From: Podarcis pityusensis
Taxonomy: Eukaryota
Assembly (NCBI GenBank): GCA_964106645.2
Contig: OZ067054.1
Reading direction: 5' to 3' (one strand)
DNA length: 64,000 nucleotides
The notes under the pieces are model-generated. The model saw nothing but the letters and a program-made list of their open reading frames with translations. It was not told the DNA's origin and did not search any database. Position 1 is the stretch's first letter. Each line of letters begins with the position of its first letter. Shown here piece after piece: positions 1 to 52,016 of this stretch. The translations under genes and the position numbers were made by a program.

Positions 1-2867
1 ACTCCATCCTTCCTCCCCCCGCCCCGGGAAGGCCCTGGGGTGACACCCGTAATTGGCCATGAAAGGGCTCATTCCTGTGGACACGTGTTCAGCGTTATTG
101 TACGCAAATTCAGCCAAAGCTAATTTCTCTACCCAATCGTTCTGTCTCTCGCTGACATAGCAGCGTAGGTACTGCTGGAGTATACCGTTCGCTCTTTCGG
201 CTTGTCCGTTGGTTTCTGGATGCCTCGCCGTCGAGAAGCTCACCTCGACCTGTAGCAAGCTCATGAGTCTCCGCCAGAACCGGGAAGTAAATTGTTTCCC
301 GCGATCCAAGATTACCCTCAATGGAGCCCCGTGCAGTCTAAAAATGTGATCCACAAACAGCCTGGCTGTCTCTTCTGCCGTTGCTGCATGTGAGCAAGCT
401 ACGAAATGGCACATTTTAGTCAGTAAATCGACCACTACCATGACCGCTGTCTTTTCCCTTGACTTGGGCAGATCTGTCATGAAATCAATGGACACCACCT
501 CCCAGGGCCTTTCCGGTGTCGGTAAGGGTTCCAGTAGCCCCGCGGGGGCAGCCCTTTCCCCCTTTGCCCTCTGGCATCGGTCGCACCCTCGTACATATTC
601 TCGTACGTCTTCCCTCACCTTTGGCCACCAGAACTGCCTGGTGACAAGTAGCATGGTCTTGTGCTGTCCAAAGTGCCCAGCTCTTGGGTTGTCATGGAGT
701 TGTCTAAGTACCTTCCCCCTCAAAGTCTCCCCTGGTACATACAGCGCCCCCTTATAGTACAGTAGTCCTTCCTTTTCCTCAAACCCTCCATTGACTTCCT
801 TTCCGTCCCTGAGTTCCCTGATTTTTGTCTGAGCAAACTCATCGTCTCTGGTGAGCCCTGCCAGTTCTCATTTCCCAACCAACGCTCCCCCACACACCCA
901 CCGGTCCTCGGGGAACACGTGCCTGGTCTCTGGTGGCCCCTCTCCTTCCATGTACTCCGGTTTCCGGGAGAGAGCATCTGCCCTTACGTTTTCCTCTCCC
1001 GGCATGTATTGGATCTCGAAGAAAAACTTGGCGAACTCCTGAGACCATCTGATCTGTCTCTGGTTGAGCACTCGCGCGGTCCGCCAGTATTCCAAGTTCT
1101 TGTGGTCAGTTTGGACCTGGATCTTGTGCCGCGCCCCTATCAATAGATGTCTCCATTGCCGAAATGCCGCATAGATCGCAAGCAGTTCTCGGTCATACAC
1201 CGTGTAGTTTTGCTCCGACTTGCTCAGCTTCCTAGAGAAAAAGGCACACGACCTCCAGTTCTGATTGGCCCCGGGCTGCAAAAGGACCGCTCCAATCGCG
1301 CGGTTGGACGCGTCCGTCTCCAGTCTCATGGGCTTCTCCGGATCAACGTGCAGGAGCTGCTCTTCCGAGGCGAACGCCTTCTTCAGTTTTTCAAAGGATT
1401 GCTGCGCATCCTCTGTCCACGCGAACTTCTTTTTGCTACTAAGACAATCCGTTATGGGCACTGTCAAGTGAGTGAAGTTCTTTATGAACTTCCTGTAGAA
1501 GTTGCTGAAGCCTAGGAACCTCTGCACATCCTTTCTGTTTTGGGGGGCTTTCCATTCCAGCACTGCCTTCACTTTGCCCGGGTCCATGGCTAGTCCTTTG
1601 TCTGACAACCTGTACCCCAGGAACTCAACCTCCCTGGCGTGGAATTGGCATTTTTCCAGCTTGACCCACAACTGATGCTTCTTCAGTCTCTGTAGCACCT
1701 CCCTGACGTCTCTGACGTGTTGCTTTTCATTGTCCGAATAGATTAAGACGTCATCCAAAAAGGCTACGCAATTCTTGTACAGCAGGGGCCCCAACACATG
1801 GTGCATGAAGGCTTGAAAGCAGGCGGACCCCGATTGTAATCCAAATGGCATGACTAAGTACTCAAAAGCCCCCAGGGGGGTGAACATGGTCATTTTCCAT
1901 TCGTCCCCTTCCCTTATCCTAATCAGATTGTATGCTCCCCTGAGGTCCAGCTTGGTAAAAATCTTCCCCTGCCTCACACGTGTCAAAATATTGTCAATCC
2001 TGGGCATTGGGAAAGTCACGGGTTCTGACACCAGGTTTAGGGCCCGGTAATCCACGACTAATCTGGGCTGATTAGTCTCTTTTTTGTCCACAAAGAACAC
2101 TGGACTGCCCCCCACCGCCTTTGATTCCCTTATGAAACCTCTCTTCAGGTTCTTGTCAATAAACTGCTGCAACTCCTGCATCTCCCGGTATGGCATACAG
2201 CTTACCCACCGGTAACTGAGCCCCTGGAAGCAGGTTGATTTGGCAGTCAAATGGCCTGTGGGGGGGGCAGTCTGTCTGCCTCCCTCTCACTGAAGACCTC
2301 CTTCAAATCAGCATATTGTGTTGGCACCTCCCTTTTTTGCTCCAGGGCCACCCCAGCCACCCTGGCCACAGTCCTTCTTGGTTCCTTCCCTCCCAGACAG
2401 TGTTCTGAGCAGTAAGCTGACCCAAAGGTGACCGACCGCTGATGCCGTGACACCACTGGGTCATGTATTGCCAGCTAGCTCATTCCCAGTATTATCGGGG
2501 GTCCTGCCAGCGTGGCCACGTGAAAGGCAATGGTTTCCGTGTGCCTGGAGACACTCATTCGCATTAGTGGTGTCTGGTGTGTCACTTCCTCTCCCAGGAG
2601 TTCCCTGCCATCGATGGTGGTCACCTGCAAGGGAAAATCTAGTGGCAACAGGTGGAGCTGGTGCTCCAGAGCGAAGTCTCTGCTGAAGAAATTACACGAG
2701 CTGCCAGAATCTAGCAGCCCCTCCACTTTGACGGGGTGCCCATTTGGGAGTTCTAGCACCACCTCTATGGCTATAGCTGCCTTGGGAGGGTCAGGCTGGG
2801 GCACTTCTATTGGTTGCTGGCCTGGCTGCTGCCCCTGCTGGTTGACAGCCAGGCGTTGTCGTTTCCC
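1..2867 (-). pseudogene. Gypsy pol (protease, RT, RNase H, integrase), disrupted
   Basis: Protease LLDSGSSCNF; RT LDLRGAYNLIRI, MPFGL, FLDD; RNase H ETDAS, RELLAI, TDHKNLEY, ADALSR; integrase LHDNPRAGHFG...CDRC and VSMDFMTDLP continue in frame past the stop at 868. Confidence 0.95.
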
Positions 2868-3826
2868 TGCACCGGCTCTTCCTCCCCCTTATCGTCGTGG
2901 CCTGCAGCCCCCATCATGCCTTGCCAGGCTTTTCGTTGAGGGCAGACCTTTGCAAAGTGTCCCGGTCGCTGACAGAGGAAACACTTCTTGGTAGTTTTCC
3001 ACTCCTTTTTCCGCCCTTCCCCAGCGTTTGAAACTTCGCGCGTGTGCGCTCCATCAATTTCCATCGGCTCCGCCGCCTGGGAAGGCTCCCTCGGCATCTC
3101 CGGAATGCGGTTGTCATGGAAACGTTACGCCCTTATCTCCCACTTCTCCTGAGCCCGCGCTTCCTGGCGTACACCGATTGCAAGCACAGCCTTTGTGAGT
3201 TCTTCCATCGACCGCGGGCGGGGCACTCGGGACAACTCGTCTTTCACTTCGGGGGACAAACCCGCTTCAAACAACATTTGTACTGGTTCAGAGTCCAGAT
3301 CCCACCCGAGCTTGTGGACTAACATCGCAAAACGCGACCAGTAGTTTCTGACGGACAGGCTCCTCTGCTTGCACCCCATCAGCTCCCTCTGTGTCACGCT
3401 TTGCTCAATCTTGCTGGAGAACATCGCGTCCATTGCGAGGTAGAATTTCTTAAGATCTTTCAAAGCGTCATTCCCCGTTGCCATCAAGGGCCTGATCCAT
3501 TCGCACGCCCCATCCTGCAGATGTCCAATAATGTAAGCCATCCTCTCCCTGTCATCCGCAAAGTCGTTTTTCTGCAATTCCAAAGCGTACTGATTTTCCG
3601 TTCGGAAGGCATTGTAGTCTTGGGGCTTTCCACCAAACTTGTGTACCAGCCCCGGGACCTTCCTCCCTATCGGGGTGGCTCTGACCTGGGCATCCTGAGC
3701 CTGTCTCTCCTCCAGCCGCGCGGACAGGGTAGCGACATGCGTCTCCAGGTCTCGGTTCCTCTCGACCAGACCTCGCACCATGGCTTCTTGCTCTGTCTCT
3801 CCGGCCGGCCCTGTTTGGCTCATCAT
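2807..3826 (-). pseudogene. Gypsy gag (capsid + CCHC zinc knuckle), premature stop at 3125-3127
   Basis: ORFs 3125-3826 and 2807-3097 are in the same frame. Motifs PMEIDG and CFLCQRPGHFAKVC; PEG10/RTL-like gag segment FGGKPQDYNAFR...HLQDGACEW. Confidence 0.9.
2820..2867 (-). promoter_or_regulatory. -1 programmed ribosomal frameshift signal (G GGA AAC + stem-loop)
   Basis: Slippery heptamer at 2867-2861, 6-nt spacer, then a 9-bp stem GCCTGGCTG/CAGCCAGGC. The -1 frame is open into the protease. Confidence 0.8.
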
Positions 3827-3855
3827 GCTGCCTCTCCTGGGCTGCGCACAAGCAA

Positions 3856-4311
3856 CGTCAGGGACTGACGGATTGCTGTAATGGTTCTAGGGGTTGCTCG
3901 TGCGTAAGCCGGTGCAAACACCCGGCTGGGTTGCCTGAGTGAACCTTTCCTGTCCGGACAGCCACTCACCCGTGGCTATCTCAGTAGCTGGCAGAATCCG
4001 TCAGTGGGCGTTTCTTAAACTTCTTCCAGCAAAGAAGCTCTTTGACGCCTAGTCTCCTCCTACTCTCTCTGCGCGAAAGCCTTCTGCGCAAGGAGGGCGT
4101 AGGCAGCGGAGGACCCCTACTCTCCCCGCTGGTCCCCGGCAAGGAGTCATGGCACCGCCTCGCCGCTTCCCCCATCTGCCCCCCTTCTCCACTGGTGCTA
4201 CGCTGATTCTCTTCCCCAGAAGATGGGCTGCCTCTCCCACTCCCGGGACGCTCTCCGGAATCCCTCTGGATTTTGCTCTCTCCCCCCGGCACTGATGGCA
4301 GTTCCCTGACA
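3856..4311 (-). repeat. 5' LTR of the Gypsy element (inner boundary 3856 or 3877)
   Basis: Starts TGTCAGGGA at the GC-rich/AT-rich boundary. Ends either TCCCTGACG (3856, inverted match to the start) or CCATTACA (3877). The 3' LTR is not visible to confirm. Confidence 0.65.
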
Positions 4312-7219
4312 CTCTGTCTAGCAGATTCAGAATGAAATGTCTCAACAACAGTTCTTTAAAATTACTTTAAATTACATCCCCCTCTGACCGTAACAACAAC
4401 AAACGTAAGCTATGAACTCTGCACCGATCTGAATTCTGAACTTGAATAAACTGAACTATATCATTGACAAAGCCTGAGGGCTTTCTGCCATATAAATAGC
4501 CTGTGAGAAACTTCCATTTGTTTCTACACAGGCCCTGCAGGTGCTTGCTTTCAGGAGAAAATGCTGGAAACTATGAGAAGCTTCCAGAACCAAACTACCT
4601 GTGATGTGACTGGTCAGTTGGCAGAAGCCACGCCCATCGCTCAGTTGAATTGCCAGTTGTGTCGCTAGAAAGCGCCACAACATACATCATCCAAATGACC
4701 TCCGCGAGAATTTCAATTTCAAATATCCTGATTATTTCTACATTTACTAAAGTATTTTTATTTATTCACTTGGGGGGGGGGGGCAGCCTGTAACTTTAAT
4801 AGTTGTGTGTAAAAGGTGGCATTTTGGAAAGTGCAGAGATGACAAAAACTCAAAACAATGAAAGATGCAGAAATTCTATTCTTTACATCTTGCCACTCTA
4901 CTCACTTATGCCAGCAAAGCATTCTGGAGGTGGCAGCAAACAGACACAAATAGACTTTGGGGTGAGGATATTAAAAAGGGATTAGACAAATTCCTGGTGA
5001 ATGGGCCTATCAGAGGCTATTAGCCATTATAGCTTAAAGGAACTTCCAGGTTCAAAAACCTGTTGCTGAAGGAAAGTGGGAGCGCTGTTGCCTGCTAGCA
5101 AATTTCTTGGAAACAGATACTTGGCTACTCTGGGAAACAGGCTGCTTGACTAGGTGGGCCCTAATCCTGACTCTTACAATGTTTGGCAGGACTCTTACAA
5201 TGTTTGGCAACTCTGTAGTCAAAGGTAGTTTATTTACTTGTTCTGTAATAATAAACTGGATGTGGGGTTGGACCAGATGACCCTCGGGGGTCCCTTCCAA
5301 CTTTCCAACTCTGTGATTCTATTGTGTCCCCATAGTTGTCCTGCTTTGGAAGAGATAGATTGTAATAGAGGGCTAAGCATATTATGTGAATAGCAGGTGA
5401 ATGCATTAGAAAGACCATTCAGAGGGAAAGTACCATTTTAAAGCAAGCCAGGTCATTGCTTGCATTTTCTTTGTAATGGAAAATTGATTTGAGTAGCTAT
5501 GATTCAAAAAACAGTGTGTGGTTGTTCCCTCACCCGCCCCCATATACCCATCAGTGGGTGGTGAAATAACTACTGAATGCCTAATAATTGGTTTAATCTC
5601 CTCCACAGCTAGTGTAGCCTAAGCTCATCAGAATTTTCCATGCCATGCATCTAAACAGCTCCTCTGCAGTGCTGGCTGAGTTTAAAGCAAAGCTTATGCT
5701 GTGCCATATTTGTAGCCTTATCAGTTACAACACTCATTGATCCAGCACCACAATCTATATTCTTTCCTCCAGCATTGTCCTGAGCACATTAAAAGAGTAA
5801 TTTAGCAGGGCTGTTTGTTTGGATACAATATCAAAACAATAAATACAATATGTGAGAATTTCAGTTGGTATGTTTGTTACTTAGACCTACTTTTAAATAT
5901 ATTTATTTCAAAGTAAGCCCTATTGGAAGCATCAGAATTAAACTTACTGTGTTTATGAAAAATGTTACTAGCTATATTTTTAACTCATTAATTACTGAAT
6001 GAAAGTAATTTCTGGTCCTCAAGCTTAAGGAATGTGTTTGACCCCAGATCTTGGTTGTGAATCAACTCCAAGTATTGTTGGTCTACAAAGTTTATATAGG
6101 CTCTTTTCTTAAAATATAGATGAAGGCATTTTAGCTCTGAACTCTTGCTGTGGTAGCAGATTCCATAGCTGGCCACCTCTCTGTGAAGAATGCTTTTGCT
6201 ATCCCTGCCCAAATTGTTTGAGGGTAGAATATTGTCAGGAGACCTGGGTTTTATTATTGGACTTGCTATTACTTTGCTGTGTGACTGGAATGTATCCTTT
6301 TTCTGTGCCCCATCAATAAAAAGTGGATGACATATTTGCAAGAAGATGTAAGGCTTCTTGAAAAGTGCAGTATGAGAAGTGCTGCATAACCTTTAGTCAA
6401 ATCTTTTGGTACTTGTGATCATTCTAGGGCTTAGAGATGATTAATGCTAGACTGCATCTGCTCAGCTTTTGCTGGGGTTGCTTTCACTTTATCAGCCGTA
6501 ATAACTCATTGCCCACTTTACTGCCAGAATCTATTTTAAATCCATCTCAAAGTTTGCCCCAGAAACTTTCCATGCTAATTCCTCTTTCCTTGTGTGCATT
6601 GCAGGTAAGGAAGTAATTAAGTCAAATATACATCCCAGCACTGACAAGATTAAAAGATGTTTTATACATGAATGTCAGACCTAGATCACTTACAGATAGC
6701 CTGTTTATTGAGGATTTGTCCTGATTTGTTTGCACATTTTCGGGGGGAGGTTAGATGAGATGGGCTGTTTATTGAGCATTCGTTTGGAATGATTGATTTG
6801 CATAGAGGTTATATGACATTGCATCAAATGATTGCTGTCCCACACTTTTCAATGCATTTTCCCATCACTTTTTTGTAGCCGCATTGTATTTTTATATTTT
6901 ATTAACAGGTAGAGTTGGTTTTTATTGGAAATAATAAACTGCTCTGTGGAGGAAGTTCCTCAATAAGCAGGATATATTAAAATAAGGTTTTTTTTAAAAC
7001 TCTTCCTGCCCTCTGTGATCCCAAGGACAGGTCACCATAGCAACTGTTATTTTTCATGTTCCAAAGATGCACATAACCACAGTCACTTAGAGACAACTAT
7101 GATTGAGTGGAATTTAATTTTCTGAAATATATAAATAACTTCCTGATCACTGAGTGAGTTTGTTGAGGCTGATAGGAGCTGGATGGGAGTTGGGAGTTCA
7201 ACAATATCTGGAGGATACT

Positions 7220-7620
7220 TGGACCCTGAGATCATACTCTGAGGTCCTTCTTTGTGTGCCTTCTCCAGGAGAGGTCTGGAGGGTGGTAACATGAGAAAGG
7301 GCCTTTTCTGCAGTGGCTCCCCATTTGTGGAATGCTCTCCTCAGGAAGGTTCAGCTGGTGCCTTATTAATTTTCCTTATTTTATTTTATTTATACCCCGC
7401 CCATTTGGGCGGCATCCAGCAGAATATACAAAACATAAGAACCCGTCAAACACCAATTTGCCTTAAAGATTATTGTTCTCATGAATTTATTTATTTATAA
7501 CATTTCATACCTGCCTTTCAATGATTGGCTTACTTTTTAAGCCATTATACACCTTTAAGCGCCAGGTGAAAATGTTCCTCTTCAACCAGACCTTTGGCTG
7601 ATTGAGATCCAATGCTCTTT
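7220..7620 (+). mobile_element. L2/CR1-group LINE 3' fragment, interrupted by another insert
   Basis: GGCCTTTTCTGCAGTGGCTCCCCATTTGTGGAATGCTCTCC (AFSAVAP..WNAL-like), later TTTAAGCGCCAGGTGAAAATGTTCCTCTTC. Confidence 0.55.
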
Positions 7621-8499
7621 TAAATGTGTTGTGGGAGGAGGGATTATTGGTTTGTTTTTGTTCTTTTTTATTATGTATTTTGCAATATACAAATTTAATA
7701 AATACTAATAATAAATAATAGGCTCCCCACTCCCATGCTATGCTTCCATACTTTCTAGTAGTGACCCTTTATAAAGGCAGCCCTGTTTCATTCTAAATCT
7801 AAATACATTGCTTGTGATTGCATGAAAAAATGTCAAATAGCCATCACTAGTGCTATTTTTCTAGAAAAAGCGGTGCTGGCACTCACCATGAATGCCTCCC
7901 TTGTTCTCTTACAATGGCAATGGCACCCACCTGAGAGGTGCTGAAGCTGAGTTCCGTTGAGTTCCATCTCAAACCCCCCCCCCCCAGCTATCACTGTAGC
8001 AACATGATCAGGACCTGGGACCACAGCACATGGGAGGGAGGGAGAATGAAATGTGTGTTCCATCCATCCTTACTTCACACACTCCAATTAATTCATTACT
8101 TCCTGATTAATTATGTCTACCTGAAAAAGTTCAGAAGGTGGTGGTGCATAGGTGGGACTTCTCTGTGGTGGCTCCATGTAATGTCTACCTCCCTACCTTC
8201 TGCCCTATCAGTCTCAGTGAGCACTAACCTCTACTGGTTTATTTATATATGTATTTATAAATAAAAGAATAAACACACACACACACCTTTCAACAAGACG
8301 CTCAAGGCAGCTTGGTTTATGGCATCTACGTAACTGGAAGGGATTGGAGAGTTGGGGGCGTGAAGTCATCAGTAAGCTAAATGTCCTTTTCTGTCAAGGA
8401 GAGCGTGTTGAGCTGGTGTGTAGGGTCAAACATCAGTTAACAAATTGGGATTTAATCCTCTTCTGGGTGGTAGCTGACTAAGTAAGATTTAATCCAGAC

Positions 8500-8700
8500 A
8501 AGATAGAGGTGTTTTTGGTTGCTAGGACTAGTAATCCTGGGATAGTGATGCAGCTAGTTTGGGATGGGATTAGACACACCATGAAAAATCAGGTCCACAG
8601 CCTGGGAATGCTCCTGGACCTGGCTTTGATTCAGGATGATCAGGTGGCAGAGTTTGCCCAGTTTAAGCTGATATGCCAATGGTGCCTCTTTTGTGGGAGG
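8500..8700 (+). mobile_element. L2-like LINE ORF2 fragment
   Basis: Translation QLVWDG...QVHSLGMLLDLAL...FAQFKLICQ resembles the reptile L2 post-RT region. Confidence 0.5.
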
Positions 8701-8859
8701 GAAACTTGGGGCTGTATTCATCTAACCTTTATATGAAGTAGGTGCAAGAAATTAATGGACCTAAGTTAGTCATGGTGGGTCTACTCTGAATGAAAATTTG
8801 TTGAATACAACCCCTGGGCGTGATCACTCATGCCTTATTTAAATTGACTGTCAGGAGCC

Positions 8860-9075
8860 ATACTGTATCTCCAGAACTACAAAATCAATTTCATGCCCTC
8901 ACCTCGGACACTGATTCTTGGCCAGAGGAGCAAGAACAGTGGTTGCAGATCTCAGAAGACACTGAGGTGGCAGTGAAAGGTACAGTGTACAGAATTCCTG
9001 CTGCTCATCAGAAAAGGAAGAGACGTGTGGTGGTGGCAGGTGACTCCCTGCGGAGGGGGACAGAGGCAGCAGTGT
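8860..9075 (+). mobile_element. CR1 LINE ORF1 fragment (GDSL esterase-like motif)
   Basis: Translation LQNQFHAL...KRKRRVVVAGDSLRRGTEAAV matches the typical CR1 ORF1 motif. Confidence 0.65.
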
Positions 9076-9775
9076 GAGGAAGAATGGCTCTCCTTGACCT
9101 GATTGTCTTCCTTTCTGAATGACTGCCATAAGTATGGGAACTGAGTGCCAGTCCATTGGAACGACTTCTTAGTGCTTCTTTCCAGCATGTGTGTGTCTTT
9201 TCAAAAGGAAATTACCTCCCTGTTGGTTGGAAATTAAATAAGAAAAAAAAAGTCACGTAGGAACAGCACGAAAGTTGCTCTCTCCTCTGAAAGCTTTAGT
9301 TAGCAGCAGCATTAACAGCTAAATGTGTAATTCTAGTGCAAGTTTGCAGCTGACCACTATGCTCACATTGTTTTTTACAATCTATTTAGCATGGAATCCT
9401 TTGCTTTCACATTTTTTTTAAAAAAAACCTCTGCCTTCTGCATAATGGCAGATTTAACTGTTTTTGGTCTTGCTAAACAGAAGTATCCAATATTGGTTCC
9501 TGTGTCTGGTAATTTTTATCCCAGAGTGAAGACTCGTTGAAATAGATGTGATATGGTTTTATGTGAAAACATTAGTTTCCTGAAGCACTTCACTGTTCTG
9601 GCGCTGTAAAATGAGAAATACAAAACAGATAAAATGATTCCTTTTATTAGATTCTCTTCTGTTGTTGAAGACACATGCATACCTTCCAGTTACTTAGAGC
9701 TCTTTATCAACAGGAAGTTGGTTCAATAAAAGATTAGATGAATTAAAAGTGTTCTGTTTTCTATTTTGCAATTTA

Positions 9776-11779
9776 CCGTATTTTTCGCTCTATAGGACGC
9801 ACTTTTTTCCCTTCAAAAATGAAGGGAAAATGTGTGTGCGTCCTATGGAGCGAAGACGCCATAGCCCCGCGACCCTCTCCCGGCTGGAGAGGTGACGGGC
9901 GGCTATGGCAAGAGCCTCAATAGCCGCCCGTCACCTCTCCAGCCGGGAGATGGTCGTGGGGGGCTGCTTTAGCCCCGCGCATGCTCTCCCAGCTGGAGAG
10001 GTGACGGGCGGCTATGGCAGGAGCTTCTATAGCCGCCCGTCACCTCTCCAGCCGGGAGAGCGCGCGCGGGCACCCCGCGACCCTCTCCCGGCTGGAGAGG
10101 TGACGGGCGGCTATTGAGCCTCTTGCCATAGCCGCCTGTCACCTCTCCAGCCGGGAGAGGGTCGCAGGGCTGTTGGCGAGGTGATGGGCGGCTATAGAAG
10201 CTCCTGCCATAGCCGCCCGTCACCTCTCCAGCCGGGAGAGGGTCGTGGGGGGCTGCTTTAGCCCCGCGCACGCTCTCCCGGCTGGAGAGGTGACGGGCGG
10301 CTATGGCAAGAGCCTCAATAGCCGCCCGTCACCTCTCCAGCCAGCAGAGGGTCGCGGGGGGCTGCTTTAGCCCTGCGCGCGCTCTCCCGGCTGGAGAGGT
10401 GACGGGCGGCTATGGCAGGAGCTTCTATAGCCGCCCGTCACCTCTCCAGCCAGGAGAGGGTCGCGGGGGGCTGCTTTAGCCCCGCGCGCGCTCTCCCGGC
10501 TGGAGAGGTGACGGGCGGCTATGGCAGGAGCTTCTATAGCCGCCCGTCACCTCTCCAGCCGGGAGAGCGCGCGCGGGCACCCCGCGACCCTCTCCCGGCT
10601 GGAGAGGTGACGGGTGGCTATTGAGGCTCTTGCCATAGCCGCCCGTCACCTCTCCAGCCGGGAGAGGGTCGCAGGGCTGCTGGAGAGGTGATGGGCGGCT
10701 ATAGAAGCTCCTGCCATAGCCGCCCGTCACCTCTCCAGCCGGGAGAGGGTTGTGGGGGGCTGCTTTAGCCCCGCGCACGCTCTCCCGGCTGGAGAGGTGA
10801 CGGGCGGCTATGGCAAGAGCCTCAATAGCTGCCCGTCACCTCTCCAGCCAGGAGAGGGTCGCGGGGGGCTGCTTTAGCCCTGCGCGCGCTCTCCCGGCTG
10901 GAGAGGTGACGGGCGGCTATGGCAGGAGCTTCTATAGCCGCCCGTCACCTCTCCAGCCGGGAGAGCGCGCGCGGGCACCCCGCGACCCTCTCCCGGCTGG
11001 AGAGGTGACGGGCGGCTATTGAGGCTCTTGCCATAGCCGCCCGTCACCTCTCCAGCCGGGAGAGCGCGCGCGGGGCTGCTGGAGAGGTGATGGGCGGCTA
11101 TAGAAGCTCCTGCCATAGCCGCCCGTCACCTCTCCAGCCGGGAGAGCGCGTGTGGGGCTGCTGGAGAGGTGACGGGCGGCTATAGAAGCTCCTGCCATAG
11201 CCGCCCGTCACCTCTCCAGCCGGGAGAGGGTCGCGGGGGGCTGCTTTAGCCCCGCGCGCGCTCTCCCGGCTGGAGAGGTGACGGGCGGCTATGGCAAGAG
11301 CCTCAATAGCCGCCCGTCACCTCTCCAGCCAGGAGAGGGTCGCAGGGGGCTGCTTTAGCCCCGCGCGCGCTCTCCCGGCTGGAGAGGTGACGGGCGGCTA
11401 TGGCAGGAGCCTCTCTGCTGCGCCTTTCCGCTGCTCCCTGACCTGCTCTTTGGGGCTGGTGGTGGGCTTCCCCCCGCCAGCCCCAAAGAGCAGGTCGAAA
11501 TGAACCTGAAGCCTGGAGAGCGAGAGGGGTCAGTGCACACCGCCCCCTCTCGCTCTCCAGGCTTCCAAGGTAGCCGCCTGAACGCACCTTAAACGGCACC
11601 TTGTTTTAGAGCGGGAAAACAAGAGGGGGAAAGTTCTCCCCCTCTCTGCGCAGCGCCTCCTGCCACTTCGCTGAAGGGGCGCTGGGCAGAGAGGGGGAGA
11701 AATTTTTTTTCTTGTTCTCCCCCCTCTAAAACAAAGTGCGTCCTATTGTCCGGTGCGTCCTATGGTGCGAAAAATACGG
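9776..11779. mobile_element. Non-autonomous Tc1/mariner-superfamily (Tc2/Kanga-like) DNA transposon with hairpin-array interior
   Basis: TIRs CCGTATTTTTCGCTCTATAGGACGCAC / GTGCGTCCTATGGTGCGAAAAATACGG; TA on both sides (9774-9775, 11780-11781); no transposase. Confidence 0.88.
9875..11410. repeat. Tandem array of 15 complete palindromic units plus one half unit (32-bp arm, 13-nt loop, 32-bp arm)
   Basis: Arm CTCTCCCGGCTGGAGAGGTGACGGGCGGCTAT and its reverse complement flank loops GGCAAGAGCCTCA or GGCAGGAGCTTCT in either orientation. Some units have a shortened left arm. Confidence 0.97.
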
Positions 11780-12744
11780 TACTTGCAATTTATGCACATT
11801 TAACTTGTGCACATTCAGCTTTACACACTGGACAAAAGAAATCAAAAAGAGGTGGAAAGAGACTTCAGCAGTCCCATCCACCACTGAATCCAATTGGAAC
11901 CCAATGTGTTTTGACTATACACAATTTTGGCTTTAGGCAATATCCCCAGAGCATAACCCCTGTGCAAGTTAAGAGTGGCTTGTATGAGAAATTGATTCAA
12001 AAAGTATATGGTCTCAAAACATGGATTCAGTAAGGGTAGATCATATAATTGTTAACAATACCAACAAGGCCATAAATTCATTATTTTACTACATTTAAAG
12101 AGATATTTGACCACATGGAATAAGGAAAGCAAATCTTTAATTTTAGAAAATGAAGATGAATGTAAGACTTTACAAGCATAAGTACCTTCTGCTTTTCATC
12201 AGTTGCCTATATGGCCCCCATCTTCCATCGCTTATATTTTTTAAGCCAGGCAAAATGTTTGCCCTTCTGCCCTCCAATATTAAGCAGCTATCAGATCTTC
12301 TGAGTGCCATTTAGACTATTGTTTATTTTGGCTTATTAAAAGGTAAGAGATTATGTTGGAACATCAGTCATTTTAAAAGGTAATCAACAAAAAGGAAACA
12401 TAGAAACTGAACTAGTCATGGAAATTGGCTTCATAGGCAGGTGATCAGCACTTAAGTAAACAGTGGCTCTTTGTCTTTGTTCCAAAGCTGTTGGAAAAGT
12501 TTTGTCTTTGCAACTGCAAAGAGTGACTGACATTGGGATGTCTTACAAAGCATCAGACACTTATGTGGAAGGAAAAGAAAGTTTGGTGACAGAGGTCTGC
12601 TTAATTCTCAGATAAGCTGGTTAAAGCAGTAGTTATCAAGAGTAGAACAATGTATGTAGCTGCTCCCTACAGATTTTAATATCTGTATGGATCGTAATTG
12701 CTGGCAGACATGGAGTGATTTATGGGAAGCTATTCTGTTGACCA

Positions 12745-13094
12745 TAAGGCACGCGGGTGGTGCTGTGGGTTAAAACACAGAGCCTGAGGCTTGCCAATCA
12801 AAAGGTCGGTGGTTCGAATCCCCGCAATGGGGCAAGCTCTCATTGCTCTGTCCCTGCTCCTGCCAACCTAGCAGTTTGAAAGCACAAAGTGCAAGTAGAT
12901 AAATAGGTACCACTCTGGCGGGAAGGTAAACAGCGTTTCCATGCCAGAAGCGTGGTTTGCCAGAAGCGGCTTAGTCATGCTGGACACATGACCTGTACGC
13001 CGGCTCCCTCAGCCAATAAAGCGAGATGAGTGCCGCAACCCCAGAGTCGTCTGCAACTGGACCTAATGGTCAGGGGTCCCTTTACCTTTACCTT
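12745..13094 (+). mobile_element. Sauria SINE
   Basis: tRNA-like head with B box GGTTCGAATCC, (ACCTTT)n tail, 14-bp TSD TATTCTGTTGACCA (12731-12744, 13095-13108). Confidence 0.88.
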
Positions 13095-15579
13095 TATTCT
13101 GTTGACCAGTCAGCCAATACAGCCAGGATTTGTGGTGCTATATGGTTACATGTGCAAAGCCACCCAGGGGTTTTCTGTTCTTAGCTTGGATTGCGTAGCT
13201 TTGCAGTAGAAAGGCTGGGCTTGATGACATAAGCCAAAACTGGCTGGCTATGTTGTAGTTTCTGTACTATTTCTTGGGACCAGCCTCTAAGAGATGATGA
13301 TGTATGAAAGAAATTGAAAGATCTGGACTGACTTCCCACTTTCTGCAGAAATCTATATTATTGTGGGTGGCATTCTTTAACCATTTGCAGCCCTTCGTTT
13401 CAACTATCTGCAAAAATTGGAGGGAAAAACTCTGTAAAACTCTTGTGAAGCTTTGTTCTGCATACTGGGGTTAGTGAGTGCTGAAAGTATATATGATTGT
13501 TTTTAGTTTCTAATGGTTAGAACCATCATGTTAATAATTATTGCACATGCTGTGTAAATGCAAACACTGATCCATGTTCCAAAGAGGTTGTAGCTCAGTG
13601 GGCTTATATAAGTGAACGAGAGACTGCTTTTGCTAAGTAAGCATATGTTTCTTTTATTGTCATGGAAAATAAAAGATGACCCTGGACAGCTAAACTTCAG
13701 AAGAGACTTTGGGATTAAAACCTACTGTAAAAAATGACAATTGCATAAGTTAAGAAAGGGAAGCATAAGACCATTACATAATTTAATAGATTTTGCATAA
13801 AACTGTCTCTAAATGGTATGAACAGATAATTTGCCATTGTAACTTGTCACCTTTTTAAAAAGAACAACAAAACAAACAAAGGCTTTAAAATCTATGCTGT
13901 TGTTAGGGAGGGAAAGAAATTAGCATATTATATAGTTCAGTGAAGCAGAAAAGTTTCCTGTTCCAGTGCCTGTTTTGCTAATGGCTTGATTTCTTGGTGG
14001 GCCAATTAACCATTTTTATGTTTATGGATGGATAAACCTGCTTAACTGCTTGCTTGGAGTGCATTAGTGGGGATATTTAGCTCATAGTGAGTAGTTTCAA
14101 CAAGGCACTTTGTTGCATGACATCCACTAACATATACACCTTTCTATAACTAAGTGAGAACATTATAGTAAGTCCAACCATCTTAAGCATAAAACATCCC
14201 CAGCTGATGCCTGCCTTAATTTCTGAGGTAGGAGACAGCATATCTTCTTTCTGTACCTCATGCCACAGGATGACTGCTCTTCAATTTGGCAAGCTGTTTC
14301 TAATATGTAACTTTATTCTACTTTACAGTAGGTTATTTCTTGTCCTGTCTTCTGGGCAGGATGAACAATTCCCTGTGTTTCATTTTTTGAGATACATTTG
14401 TAAAACACTCATATTAGCTCCCCGCCTCCTTTTCTTGAGGCCGTATATAATTAGCTGTTTCAAACTTTCTTCATGTGTGCTTTCTAACCTAAACTTACTG
14501 TTTTCTAAATTATTTCCAGCTTAAAGTTTCATGGAACAGAAATGCCCAGAACTGAACATAGCACTGCATATGAAGTCTTACTAGTGCTCAGTGGAAGGCT
14601 ACTAGCTATGTTCTACCTCCTCAGTTGGAGGCAGTATGCCCCTGAAGGCCAGTTGCTGGGAATCACAACTGGGGAATGCTATCATGCTCAGGTCTTTCTT
14701 ACAGGCTTTCCTTTGGCATCTGGTCGGTCACTGAAAACAGAATCCTGAACTAGGCAGATGTTCCGTTGGCCTGATCCAGCAGGCTGTTCTTATGTACTTT
14801 TGCAAATGATAGCCCAGATTTCACATTCTCTGACCACTAGCACAAGGGCTGTTGTGCTAGCATAAGGGTGAGAATCATGGTTTGGCAAAATGAAATCCAT
14901 CACAACTATTACACTAGCAGAAGTTGGTGAAAGTGGTTGTGCAACAGGAAGTATTTGTGCTATAGTCATCTGTTGTGCAACCAGTCACAAGAACCATGCT
15001 GGCTTCCTGCACCTTCCCATTTATTTGTTTATTTTATTTATTTGACTTCTTAGTCGCTTGTCACCTAGCAGGTCTCCATAAACATAGGCACACTATAAAA
15101 TAGAACCATTCTGCTAGTGCAACAGGGCTAAGGGACTTTCACTTAGCACCACATTGAACTTCATTGATGGTTCTGCTGATCGCATAGCCAAAAATGGCAT
15201 TTGTCTTTTGCATCCTAATTTTTGACTTATGGCTCAGTGGTTATTCTGGATAATCAGCTAACTGTTTAATCAGGAACTGATTTGTTGACAGTCAGCAATT
15301 GACCAATTAACAAAAGGTTCCATTTGAAACAAAGCTTGCTTGTTGTAAATTAACCTAGCGTGAATTTGGAGTGCAGTTCTAAGGTGGGGCCTTTGATGCC
15401 AGTTCAGTTTGTGTGAACCAAACTCATTAATGTCAATGGAAAATAAATGGCAAGTACAAATATATTCTTTCTCCTCCCCAAGCTAAACGTGCATATGTGA
15501 GTGTGGAAAATAATTTTTGAGTGCACTACATATGTCATGAGTTCAAGTTTCTGTGTCAACAGTATTTCTTTATGAAATT

Positions 15580-17545: not shown

Positions 17546-17718
17546 GACAGGAAGCTGACCAAAGCTGAGCAGCAGAGATTTAAAGAAGAAGCTGAGATGC
17601 TCAAGGGATTGCAACATCCTAACATTGTCCGATTTTATGATTCCTGGGAATCAACTGTTAAAGGAAAGAAGTGCATTGTATTGGTAACTGAGCTGATGAC
17701 ATCTGGAACACTGAAGAC
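17546..17718 (+). CDS. WNK3: WNK3 exon, kinase N-lobe
   Basis: tttag|[58 protein letters not shown]|gtacgt; 173 nt. KAEQQR is WNK3-type rather than WNK1/WNK2. Confidence 0.96.
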
Positions 17719-25092: not shown

Positions 25093-25589
25093 CAGTGGTG
25101 CCCCGCAAGACGAATGCCTCGCAAGACGGAAAACCCGCTAGACAAAAGGGTTTTCCGTTTTGGAGGTGCTTCGCAAAACGAATTTCCTATGTGCTTACTT
25201 CGCAAGACGAAAATGTCTTGCGAGTTCCTGCGGGGTTTTTTTCCTTTCCCCCCCCTTTTTCCCAAGCCGCTAAGCCGCTTATCAGCTGATCCTTAAGCCG
25301 CTTAACAGCTGATCGCTAAGCCGCTTATCAGCTGATCGGCTAAGCCGCTTAACAGCTGATCGCTAAGCCGCTTATCAGCTGATCCTTAAGCCGCTTATCA
25401 GCTGATCCTTAAGCCGCTTAACAGCTGATCGCTAAGCCGCTTATCAGCTGATCCGCTAAGCCCGCTAAGCCGCTAATACTGTAGCGCTAAGCCGCTAAAC
25501 CGCTAATGGGCTTGCTTCGCAAGACGAAAAAACCCGCAAGACGAAGAGACTCGCGGAGCGGATTCTTTTCGTCTTGCGAGGCACCACTG
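25093..25589. mobile_element. Tigger/pogo-like MITE with internal minisatellite
   Basis: TIR CAGTGGTGCCCCGCAAGACGAA / TTCGTCTTGCGAGGCACCACTG, TA flanks, repeated GCAAGACGAA subterminal motifs. Confidence 0.88.
25271..25460. repeat. 23-24 bp minisatellite, 8 copies
   Basis: Unit TAAGCCGCTTA(T/A)CAGCTGATC(CT/GC). Confidence 0.95.
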
Positions 25590-33940: not shown

Positions 33941-36808
33941 GCTCCAGATGCACAGGTGTCCTACAGTGCAGAAGGGCAGACATTGGATGGATCCATCATG
34001 GGAGTCCCTCAGCAGATCTTGACAGCCACCTCCCCTCAGACTATCCCTGCTCCACAGATGGTGAACCAACATCTGCCAGCTAACATACCGTTAACCTCTG
34101 CTGCTAGAATCGGTAGTCAGGCTCCAGCTGCTGCAGGATCAATGGAACTGGAGCATGCTTCTGCCAGCTTTGTGCCTGCTGGTCATTCACCTGTGCTACA
34201 GGGGCAGCCTTCAGTTCAGTTTGTCAACAATATGCCAAGTTTAGCACAGGCTCTTCCTAACCCTTCAGCTCTGCCGTCAGTTCCACAGGGAGTTACCTCC
34301 ATTCAACAACCCCAGCAAGTTCCCCAGCAGGTATCAGCTGCACAGCAGCCCCAGCAGGTGGTGTCAGTTCAACAGATGCCCCAGCAAGTTCCCCAGCAGG
34401 TGGCACCCATGCAGCAGCCCCAGCAAACTGTTCAGCAGGTGGCATCTACACAGCAGGCTCCTCAACACATGGTGTCAATGCAGCAGGTTCCACAGCAGAT
34501 GGCATCCATGCAGCAGCCCCAGCAAATTCCCCAGCAGGTGGCACCCATGCAGCAGCCCCAGCAAACTGTTCAGCAGGTGGCATCTACACAGCAGGCTCCT
34601 CAACACATGGTGTCAATGCAGCAGGTTCCACAGCAGATGGCATCCATGCAGCAGCCCCAGCAAGTTCCCCAGCAGGTGGCACCCTTGCAGCAGCCCCAGC
34701 AAGTTCCCCAGCAGGTGGGATCCATGCAGCAGCCCCAGCAAGTTCCCCAGCAGGTGGCACCCATGCAGCAGCCCCAGCAAGTTCCCCAGCAGGTGGCACC
34801 CATGCAGCAGCCCCAGCAAGTTCCCCAGCAGGTGGCACCCATGCAGCAGACCCAGCAAGTTCCCCAGCAGGTGGCACCCATGCAGCAGACCCAGCAAGTT
34901 CCCCAGCAGGTGACAGTGCAGCAAGTTCCCCAGCAGGTGGCACCCATGCAGCAGCCCCAGCAAATTGCCCAGCAAGTGGCACCCATGCAACAGCCCCAAC
35001 AAGTTCCCCAGCAGGTGGCACCCATGCATCAGCCCCAGCAAATTGCCCAGCAAGTGGCACCCATGCAACAGCCCCAACAAGTTCCCCAGCAGGCAATGTC
35101 CATGCAGCAGCCCCAGCATGTTCCTCAGCAAGCAACATCCATGCAGTCCCAGCACGTTCCTCAGCAGTTGGTGGCTATGCAACAGCCCCAGCAAGTTCCC
35201 CAGCAGGTGGCACCTGTGCAGCAGCCCCAGCAAGTTCCATCCATGCAGCAGCCCCAGCAAATGGCCTCTATTCAACAGCTTCAGCAGGCAGCAGTAATGC
35301 AGCAGTCTCAGCATATTCCCCCACAAGTGGGCTCCATTCAGCAATCTCCACAAATTCCCCAGCAGGTTGGTTCCATTCAGCAGTCCCAGCAGGTTGTGCC
35401 AGTACATCAGGTCTCTGCCGTGCCACAGCCGATTCAACTTCCACAGTGCCCACAGTATCCCACGCTGCCCCTCAATGCTTCGGCGCAGCCTTCCCTGGTG
35501 CAGCAAGAGCAGCAAGCTATTCAGATGCACCAATCCACAGATCAACATCCTTGTGTAAGGCAACAGATGTTATACCACCTGCCCCTACAGCAGCAGAAAC
35601 AAGAACAGTTTCTTTTCCAGGGCAGCTCTACGGAGCAGCTGGCAGCTGTCACTCAACAAGTTGTAGAAAAGCCGCAGCAGGCCGAGCTCTCGGGTTCAAC
35701 TCCAGAGCAGGTGGCTTATCCCATCCAGTACCACCTGCAAGCCCCAGAACAGCTAATATATCAAACGCAGCCCCCCCACCAGCTCCCAGCTTCAGAGCAG
35801 CTGACACCTCAAGTGCAACCCACCAACCAGCTCCAGGCACCAGAGCAAGCACCATGTCAGATGCGTGTCGCTTACACAATGCAAGGCTCCGATCAGCCTC
35901 CGTGCACAGAGCAACTGGTCTATGCAGTCCCTGGAGTGTATCCAGGACAGCCCTTGGACCAACCGACATATCCAATGCAGTCTTTTTACCAAGGACAGGC
36001 AGCTTTCGTAAACCAGCCAGCGCCATATCTAATTCCGCCTCCAGAGATCCAGCAGGCTCACTTAGCAGTACAGGTTGCAGATCAACGGAGTTTTGCCATG
36101 CGCTCTCCTGAGAAATCGTTATATACGGTGCAGGATAGTGGCACTGGCTGCATGGAGCAGCAAGTTTGCCTAGGGCAACCAGTGGAGGCCCATGCTTATC
36201 CCTCTGAGCAGCTCCAGCCTGAGCAATCAACATATCTGATCCAGCAGGATTCCGGCATGGGGCACCAGCAACTGCAGCCTCCTCAGGCGGGACACAAGTT
36301 TGCAGAAGGCCAACACCCAGGATCGCAGGCCCCTTTTGTCCCATCTCAGCCATCTTTTATCCCACAAATGCAGCCACAGGCTCCCTATCAAGAGTTCAAC
36401 CAGCATGCTATTCCTCAGCCCCTCAACGCCACAGTCCCACAGTCTGCCCCAAACGCACCACAGACGGTGTCTTCCATGCCAGAACAGTCAGAGCCAGCTT
36501 ATGCAAGGCAACAGCCGCCAGAACTGCCCGGGCACCTGCATGGTCCTAGCCTCCTCCAGCAACCTCCAGCATTTCAGCCAGCTGATAATAACCAACCATT
36601 TACAGCTTCCTCAGTACAGTCAGCATATGTGCAGCAGCAGCAGCTGCCAATGTGCCAGGGGTCCGTGTTGCCTGCAGAGCCAGTGGTCCAGAAGCAGGTC
36701 CCTTCAACGAGTTCTGGAGCAGCATCAGCAGCCCTGAACCAGCAAGCATCACTTAGCGCAGGGACACAGCCACACCAAGAACACGTTCAAGGACAAGACA
36801 TTTCACAG
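33941..36808 (+). CDS. WNK3: WNK3 giant Gln/Pro-rich exon (956 codons)
   Basis: ttcttctcaccag|APDAQVSYS...QGQDISQ|gtatat; 2868 nt without a stop, phase 0/0, in frame with both neighbours. Composition switches to intron-like after 36808. Confidence 0.85.
34305..35395 (+). repeat. Coding tandem repeat, 39-bp unit (QQPQQVPQQVAPM), with a 138-bp duplication
   Basis: Unit CCCCAGCAAGTTCCCCAGCAGGTGGCACCCATGCAGCAG; a 46-aa block is repeated at 34391 and 34529. Confidence 0.95.
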
Positions 36809-46793: not shown

Positions 46794-46963
46794 CCGTATT
46801 TTTCCGTCTATAAGACTAATTAGGTTTTTTCCCTAAAAAATAATGTAAATAATTAAGGGGCATTTTATACACAGGGCCATCTCCCCCCATTTTCTTAAGT
46901 CTGAGTCCCCCAAAATAGGGGGCGTCTTATGCATGGGGGTGTTTTATAGATGGAAAAATATGG
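46794..46963. mobile_element. Short degenerate Tc2-type MITE nested in an older repeat
   Basis: CCGTATTTTTCCGTCTATAAGAC / GTTTTATAGATGGAAAAATATGG with TA flanks. Confidence 0.75.
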
Positions 46964-51253: not shown

Positions 51254-51630
51254 GAAAAGGTAAAGGTGAAGGACCCCTGACAGTTAAGTCCAGTCGCAGA
51301 CGACTCTGGGGTTGCGGCTCTCATCTCGCTTTACTGGCCAAGGGAGCCGCTGTTTGTCTGCAGACAGTTTTTCCGGGTCATGTGGCCAGCATGACTTTAG
51401 CTGCTTCTGGCGCAAGGGAACACTGAAACCAGAGCAGCGCATGGAAACGCCATTTACCTTCCCACCGGAGTGGGAAGCACATTTTTTGGCGTGCTTTTGA
51501 ACTGCTAGGTTGGCAGGAGCTGGGACCAAACAATGGGAGCTCACCCCGTCGTGGGGATTCGAACCGCTGACCTTCTGATTGGTAAGCCCAAGAGGCTCAG
51601 TGGTTTGGACCACAGCGCCACCCACGTCCC
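51254..51630 (-). mobile_element. Sauria SINE
   Basis: Reverse homologue of 12745-13094; 12-bp TSD TCAGAGTAGCTT (51242-51253, 51631-51642). Confidence 0.9.
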
Positions 51631-52016
51631 TCAGAGTAGCTTATGCATATCCCATTCCTATTGGATGCTTCTTCAGGTTGAGAAAGGAACATGGAGCTCC
51701 TGTTGACCAGTGAGCTAAACAATTTCTCTTGGCACACACATTCATCTGCAGATACCTCCAATCTGTGCTGAGTCATCTCTTACTAGGAGGGACCTCTCTC
51801 TTCCTGTGTTTTGCCTTTTCCTTCTTTGACTCTGTCTCAAGCTTGGCCATGGGATGCAACTGGAGCAAGCATCATTTTAATAGATTATATATGATATGAA
51901 TATAATTTTATTTCTTACGATGTTTGTTTTTTATTTTAATGATAGTTTTTTCTATGGTTTTAGCAAGTCTCGTTTTTATATGTAAGCCACCTTGAGTCCC
52001 ATCAGGGAAAAGGTAG

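What the first reader, a model, noticed from the sequence alone, without database searches (positions are those of the whole stretch)
9875..11410. Ordered array of hairpins with orientation-flipped loops inside a DNA transposon
Seen: 15 full palindromic units plus a half unit share 32-bp arms but carry one of two 13-nt loops (A=GGCAAGAGCCTCA, B=GGCAGGAGCTTCT) in either orientation. The order is A+ B+ A- B- A+ B+ B+ A- B- A+ B+ A- B- B- A+ (B+ half), a four-unit higher-order repeat with local duplications. Linkers are state-specific: CGCGCGCGGGCACCCCGCGACC always precedes A-, a linker with a shortened left arm precedes B-, and GCTGCTTTAGCCC precedes the later + units. Inference: loop inversion by template switching between arms followed by block amplification, forming a compound palindromic minisatellite carried by a mobile element. 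It could form cruciforms and, within the WNK3 pre-mRNA, about 1.5 kb of dsRNA hairpins (possible ADAR, Drosha or Dicer substrates).
Basis: partly seen in the sequence, partly recalled or inferred. Interest (0 to 1): 0.85.

Follow-up and report, generated by a model that had tools for sequence, protein, structure and literature searches.

The report
Hairpin-stuffed jumping element in lizard WNK3
A recently inserted, non-coding jumping DNA element in an intron of a wall lizard's WNK3 gene carries a 1.5-kb stack of hairpins, most likely built by repeated copy-back errors during DNA replication; it is a neat record of how repeats arise, with no sign of a function for the host.

Summary
The array is real and ordered as described: 15 hairpins plus a half, with loops A and B in both orientations. 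It lies inside a 2,004-bp non-autonomous Passer-type (pogo, 'Tc2') element at 9776-11779, with 27-bp terminal repeats and a TA duplication, in the first coding intron of WNK3 of a Podarcis lizard. The orthologous site is empty (single TA) in P. lilfordi, P. muralis and P. raffonei and the element is absent in Zootoca, so the insertion is young. Its ends are high-copy in four related organisms.

Refinements: the arm is itself an older 53-nt hairpin; both loops derive from the 13 nt that follow the last arm (11/13, 12/13); the linker before A- is an inverted, deleted copy of the long linker, so units 1-3 form a ~305-bp palindrome. Linkers flip as well as loops. Nested fold-back template switches followed by block duplication fit best. 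Arm differences are mostly CpG transitions, arguing against an assembly artefact. No evidence for a small-RNA, editing or WNK3 role.

The scan noted this family many times elsewhere in this genome, once with the same flip-flop loops (unchecked notes). MITE-borne arrays are known (Xstir, miDNA4). Modest interest.

The parts
9774..9775 (.). Left copy of the TA target-site duplication
   Evidence: Sequence; the empty site has a single TA in L002, L003 and L004
9776..9802 (+). Left 27-bp terminal inverted repeat, Passer/pogo type
   Evidence: 25/27 match to the right TIR; 22/27 to a fish Passer TIR listed in the supplement of PMC7386202 (counted by eye)
9782..9855 (.). Left terminal hairpin, containing an internal inverted copy of the TIR motif at about 9836-9855
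9857..9909 (.). Ancestral 53-nt imperfect hairpin module; its right two thirds is the 32-nt arm of the array
   Evidence: -34.4 kcal/mol, 0 of 500 mononucleotide shuffles as stable
9863..10171 (.). Palindrome of about 305 bp made of units 1-3 (A+, long linker, B+, inverted short linker, A-), centred on the B+ loop at 10016-10028
   Evidence: (pair I9)
9875..10272 (+). Higher-order block 1 (A+ B+ A- B-), 398 bp
10273..10779 (+). Higher-order block 2, with an extra B+ unit, 507 bp
10780..11260 (+). Higher-order block 3, with an extra B- unit, 481 bp
11261..11414 (+). Partial block 4 (A+ and a half unit). The 13 nt at 11402-11414 are the likely source of both loops
   Evidence: 11/13 identical to loop A and 12/13 to loop B
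11440..11496 (.). Unamplified internal hairpin module
11508..11565 (.). Unamplified internal hairpin module
11596..11739 (.). Long unamplified internal hairpin module
11736..11746 (+). Subterminal direct repeat of the inner part of the TIR
   Evidence: Sequence; a similar doubled motif is visible near the end of the fish Passer element
11753..11779 (-). Right 27-bp terminal inverted repeat
11780..11781 (.). Right copy of the TA target-site duplication
17546..17711 (+). Next WNK3 kinase-domain exon downstream (end approximate); the element lies in the intron before it
   Evidence: the first coding exon lies upstream of the window

Best explanation
This is a young non-autonomous Passer-type (pogo superfamily) DNA transposon, a MITE, that was mobilised in trans and inserted at a TA in the first coding intron of WNK3. 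Its interior is a string of GC-rich hairpin modules, and the first module was expanded into the array. Inferred steps: (1) replication ran 13 nt past the first hairpin, switched to the opposite strand, copied the arm backwards and switched forward again, which made a hairpin of a hairpin with the loop and the long linker; (2) duplication and three substitutions split the loop into A and B; (3) a further fold-back at B gave the 305-bp palindrome (inverted linker and A-), and a loop-only switch gave B-; deletions shortened two linkers; (4) the 398-bp block was duplicated in tandem about 3.4 times, with local slippage. Insertion, identity, nesting and block duplication are shown; the order of events and the replication mechanism are inferred. 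The array is most likely methylated, neutral cargo with no host function.
For: TIRs and TA duplication with empty orthologous sites in three Podarcis assemblies, and absence in Zootoca. Single-copy-depth contigs in two other organisms begin aligning exactly at the TA (records 15 and 23). The TIR type flanks BrkDBD, HTH_Tnp_Tc5 and DDE_1 fragments in other animals' contigs, which is the Passer signature in PMC7386202. Thousands of contigs pile on the element's end in four organisms. The arm is an older hairpin and both loops match the tail. The linker before A- is an inverted long linker. Variants are shared between blocks, and 8 of 10 arm differences are CpG transitions. Loop inversion by template switching is documented (PMC8794818), as are inverted triplications at short inverted repeats (bioRxiv 10.1101/2023.09.19.558550, abstract only).
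Against: No other full copy of this family could be fetched, so the ancestral form of about 509 bp is reconstructed from this copy alone. Recombination between inverted arms could leave the same products as template switching. No Podarcis transposase with these exact TIRs was found; the lizard Passer that I fetched (Phrynocephalus) has different TIRs. Methylation is inferred from the mutation spectrum only.
Confidence: 0.7

Rival explanations
1. Same transposon, but the array began as a plain A-B tandem repeat, and loops and linkers were later flipped one at a time by inversion (recombination or switching) between inverted arms, before the block was amplified.
For: By my count it needs about as many events (a duplication plus three flips). 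B- is followed by a forward linker, as a loop-only flip predicts.
Against: Units 1-3 are symmetric out to their outer arms and include the inverted linker, which one fold-back explains directly. Both loops trace to the tail, so at least one fold-back is needed anyway.
Confidence: 0.15
2. The hairpin cargo benefits the element itself, for example by helping the ends pair, favouring excision or gap repair, or affecting silencing, so hairpin arrays are selected at the family level.
For: The whole interior consists of hairpins, and unchecked notes describe many copies with the same ends and different hairpin cargo.
Against: Related elements with the same TIR type in other animals' contigs are AT-rich, mostly 170-680 bp, so a GC-rich array is not needed. 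Hairpins are self-generating under template switching. No direct test was made.
Confidence: 0.06
3. The array acts as a functional double-stranded RNA in the WNK3 pre-mRNA (editing substrate, small-RNA source or splicing regulator) and is kept for that reason.
For: Sense-strand intronic position; the predicted fold is 91% paired with a perfect helix of 72 bp. New microRNAs can arise from template switches (PMC10710096, title and abstract start only).
Against: The element is absent from the closest relatives and lies about 5.8 kb from the next exon. CpG sites are decaying. No Rfam match reaches its threshold. No listed holder of the stretch is on record as RNA, although that does not show silence. 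Incidental editing would not amount to function.
Confidence: 0.05
4. The ordered array is an assembly or fold-back-read artefact.
For: Palindromes are hard to sequence, and no read spanning the array was examined.
Against: Differences between units are mostly CpG transitions and are shared in nested fashion between blocks, which errors would not produce. Independent runs hold up to 77% of the stretch's sampled words and show the half-unit junction in other copies. The exact unit count remains unverified.
Confidence: 0.04

Closest known systems
Passer family of pogo transposons (Gao et al. 2020, PMC7386202; 'TcMar-Tc2' in repeat annotations, from my own knowledge)
   Same: TA duplication, TIR of 40 bp or less starting CCGTA, 22/27 identity to a listed fish Passer TIR, a similar doubled subterminal motif; the family is reported in reptiles.
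   Different: No transposase gene; the interior is replaced by GC-rich hairpin modules and an expanded array.
miDNA4 of Xenopus tropicalis (described in PMC12628747 and PMC9659126)
   Same: A Tc1/mariner-type MITE carrying an internal repeat as one monomer or as a variable array.
   Different: There the repeat is described as a captured satellite monomer; here the array is built from the element's own hairpin, with alternating inverted arms and flipped loops and linkers.
Xstir/Xmix of Xenopus laevis (Hikosaka and Kawahara, as reviewed in PMC12628747)
   Same: Tandem arrays derived from internal MITE sequence through stem-loop formation during replication; composite MITE-plus-array structures.
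   Different: Different host and, as I recall, a different transposon superfamily. I recall that Xstir units occur both tandemly and invertedly but did not verify it; nested palindromes with two loop states are not mentioned in the passages read.
Short-range template-switch mutations and ODIRA inverted triplications (PMC8794818; bioRxiv 10.1101/2023.09.19.558550)
   Same: Inverted loops in perfect hairpins; inverted triplications with palindromic junctions that are later trimmed by secondary rearrangement.
   Different: Those are single events in rRNA or miRNA hairpins or at kilobase to megabase scale; here several events are stacked within 1.5 kb inside a mobile element.

Membership tests
Non-autonomous DNA transposon (MITE) | Terminal inverted repeats | tested here: met
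   27 bp, 25/27 identical
Non-autonomous DNA transposon (MITE) | Target-site duplication with an empty orthologous site | tested here: met
   Single TA in P. lilfordi, P. muralis and P. raffonei
Non-autonomous DNA transposon (MITE) | No transposase coding capacity | tested here: met
   Only short repetitive ORFs; no tblastn hit with Passer fragments; no protein relatives of the array ORF
Non-autonomous DNA transposon (MITE) | High copy number | tested here: met
   4,771-11,499 contigs per run were laid on a 1.3-kb stretch, piling on the element's end; the tool's depth is not a copy number, so no figure is claimed
Non-autonomous DNA transposon (MITE) | Short length (under about 800 bp, from my own knowledge) | tested here: not met
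   2,004 bp because of the array; about 509 bp without it. It is filed as an expanded non-autonomous element, not a typical short MITE
Passer (pogo superfamily) | TA duplication and short TIR beginning CCGTA | tested here: met
Passer (pogo superfamily) | Same TIR type linked to a BrkDBD, HTH_Tnp_Tc5 and DDE_1 transposase | tested here: met
   Indirect: 1.8-kb elements with related TIRs in metagenome contigs
Passer (pogo superfamily) | DD35D transposase falling in the Passer clade, in the same genome | tested here: inconclusive
   No Podarcis partner found; the agamid Passer has different TIRs
Xstir or miDNA4 repeat families | Sequence homology to the Xenopus repeats | not testable with these tools
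   No repeat library available; compared as a kind of structure only
Known microRNA or structured RNA family | Rfam score above the family's threshold | tested here: not met
   All listed matches are far below the gathering scores

The most novel reading that the evidence does not exclude
A lacertid Passer-derived family acts as a genome-wide generator of nested-palindrome arrays: each copy rebuilds its hairpin cargo by iterated template switching, so thousands of dispersed copies form a natural experiment on how loops and linkers flip, and some intronic copies feed double-stranded RNA into editing or small-RNA pathways with effects on host genes.
Probability: 0.12. Interest if true: 0.6.

Novelty: new variant of a known kind. 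Interest (0 to 1): 0.3.

Why it matters
The copy preserves four nested levels of duplication (hairpin, hairpin of a hairpin, 305-bp palindrome, 398-bp block) at base resolution, so it illustrates how a transposon's own hairpin can seed a minisatellite. With many sibling copies, the family could be used to measure template-switch flips in vivo and may mark fragile sites or assembly trouble spots in wall lizard genomes. For WNK3 biology it probably matters little: it is a recent intronic insertion that close relatives lack.

Tried and rejected
Other full copies of the family were sought without success: none in about 350 kb of orthologous WNK3 loci; none by exact TIR in metagenome contigs or by a relaxed TIR in viral contigs; none through spurious proteins translated from the array; the Elgaria and Sceloporus loci returned no DNA. 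The search for a Podarcis transposase found only other animals' fragments and an agamid Passer with different TIRs; that search sees only proteins of 0.55-1.75 times the query length, so the blank is weak. Rfam gave only generic hairpin matches. Paper searches for this family in lizards found nothing, but the library is incomplete and no Repbase or Dfam comparison was possible.

Rejected: coding function (short repetitive ORFs only); loop-only inversion as the full story; linker-state coupling as independent evidence.

The array itself was not sent to the read-laying tool, because that tool states that it turns away long repeats; I laid only 11415-12740, beside it.

Full report
Observation. 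The 27 full arms differ from their 32-nt consensus at 10 of 864 sites, 8 of them CpG transitions. TRF reports a 398-bp period with 3.9 copies. The blocks start at 9875, 10273, 10780 and 11261; the second has an extra B+ unit and the third an extra B- unit. The linker predicts the next loop state at all 15 junctions, but this follows from block copying. The structure is far beyond chance (z = -28.5 for the first block).

Host and position. An exon at 19729-19950 matches the WNK3 kinase domain better than WNK1. A WNK3 exon from the window is 97% identical to Podarcis muralis WNK3, and the window averages 98.35% identity to the P. lilfordi locus. The host is therefore a Podarcis wall lizard close to P. 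lilfordi; the species was not determined. The first coding exon lies upstream of the window and the next begins at 17546, so the element lies in the first coding intron, about 5.8 kb from the next exon.

The carrier. The array lies within 9776-11779 (2,004 bp), bounded by 27-bp inverted repeats (25/27 identical) with TA on both sides. In P. lilfordi, P. muralis and P. raffonei the orthologous site reads straight through with one TA, and Zootoca also lacks the element. In short-read contigs of two further coded organisms, a contig begins aligning exactly at the TA, with unrelated sequence before it (records 15 and 23), as an empty site would. The insertion therefore postdates the split from the P. 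lilfordi reference, or is polymorphic.

Family. The TIR matches a fish Passer TIR at 22 of 27 positions (supplement of PMC7386202). Elements of about 1.8 kb with the same TIR type in metagenome contigs carry BrkDBD, HTH_Tnp_Tc5 and DDE_1 fragments, the Passer domain set. I take those contigs for termite host DNA, from recollection of the sample names, and did not verify it. No transposase is encoded here, and no Podarcis partner was found. Between 4,771 and 11,499 contigs per run were laid on the 1.3-kb stretch, piling on the element's right end in four organisms, so the ends are high-copy; the tool's depth is not a copy number. Unchecked notes from other windows of this genome describe Tc2-like elements with hairpin arrays repeatedly (68 notes fitted the search words), including a 561-letter array with 32-bp arms and 13-nt loops in both orientations. 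If that note is right, the flips belong to the family and not to this locus.

How the array was built. First, the arm is the right part of an older imperfect 53-nt hairpin at 9857-9909 (0 of 500 shuffles as stable), similar in size to the unamplified hairpins at 11440-11496 and 11508-11565. Second, loops A and B match the 13 nt following the last arm at 11/13 and 12/13 positions, so both most likely descend from one fold-back junction. Third, the 22-nt linker before every A- is the reverse complement of the 32-nt long linker with 10 nt removed, so units 1-3 form a palindrome of about 305 bp centred on B+. The linker before B- reads as the forward long linker with a deletion at a short microhomology (seen directly in the sequence).

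The simplest history is a parent of about 509 bp with one module; a fold-back that created the hairpin of a hairpin; divergence into A and B; a second fold-back giving the inverted linker and A-; a loop-only flip giving B-; linker deletions; and tandem duplication of the 398-bp block. The order and mechanism are inferred from one copy. Stepwise inversion of a plain tandem array needs a similar number of events and is not excluded. Loop inversion by template switching is established (PMC8794818), and inverted triplication with later trimming of palindromic junctions is proposed at larger scale (bioRxiv 10.1101/2023.09.19.558550, abstract only).

Artefact. Block-to-block differences are mostly CpG-type (for example 11 of 17 between blocks 1 and 3) and are shared in nested fashion. 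That pattern points to a real sequence that is methylated in the germline. Other copies show the half-unit junction. I did not lay reads on the array, since the tool turns away long repeats, so the exact unit count is unverified.

Function. The transcript could fold into long duplexes (91% paired, longest perfect helix 72 bp), so incidental editing or cruciform formation is physically plausible. Nothing indicates selection: the element is absent from close relatives, its CpGs are decaying, no Rfam family reaches threshold, and no holder of the stretch is on record as RNA, which does not prove silence. Small RNAs and editing were not testable.

Comparison and verdict. Non-autonomous DNA transposons carrying internal arrays are well known (miDNA4, Xstir/Xmix, Tetris). 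A second young TA-flanked element with a 23-bp tandem cargo sits in this same window. I found no paper on this lizard family or on nested flip-flop palindrome arrays in a Passer derivative, but no repeat library could be checked. I rate it a new variant of a known kind: real, mechanistically instructive, probably neutral, interest 0.3.

Noticed in passing
window 25093-25589: A second young TA-flanked non-autonomous element (TIR beginning CAGTGGTGCC, Tigger-like from my own knowledge) with an internal 23-bp tandem repeat of 8.3 copies; the site is empty in P. lilfordi L004.
   Followed up: partly
window 46794-46963: An older 170-bp element with a related CCGTA-type TIR, shared by P. muralis, P. 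raffonei and P. lilfordi; AT-rich, with no hairpin array.
   Followed up: partly
window 1-4311: Gypsy-like LTR retrotransposon (gag-like ORF 3125-3826 and RT/RNase H ORF 868-2250, minus strand) in the same WNK3 intron; present in P. lilfordi, while alignments to P. muralis and P. raffonei begin only at 4312.
   Followed up: partly
window 33941-36808: A large Gln/Pro-rich WNK3 exon with a 39-bp coding repeat; its length varies among lacertids (about 2,847 bp in Zootoca, 2,868 here, 2,985 in P. raffonei, 3,036 in P. lilfordi, 3,156 in P. muralis). It is part of annotated squamate WNK3 proteins.
   Followed up: partly
window 11786-11830 and 11897-11940: Short stretches right of the insertion pile up many contigs with shared loose ends, suggesting remnants of another older repeat beside the target site.
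   Followed up: no
window 9766-9775 and 11784-11793: A 10-bp motif occurs on both sides of the insertion, but it is already doubled in the empty site of relatives, so it is not part of the target duplication.
   Followed up: yes
window 12747-13095 and 51256-51631: Two related interspersed repeats in opposite orientation, 73% identical; they look like Sauria SINEs, from my own knowledge.
   Followed up: no
L082:10001-11506 and L083:10001-11515: Passer-type transposase genes of the agamid Phrynocephalus forsythii with a TIR of a different subfamily.
   Followed up: partly
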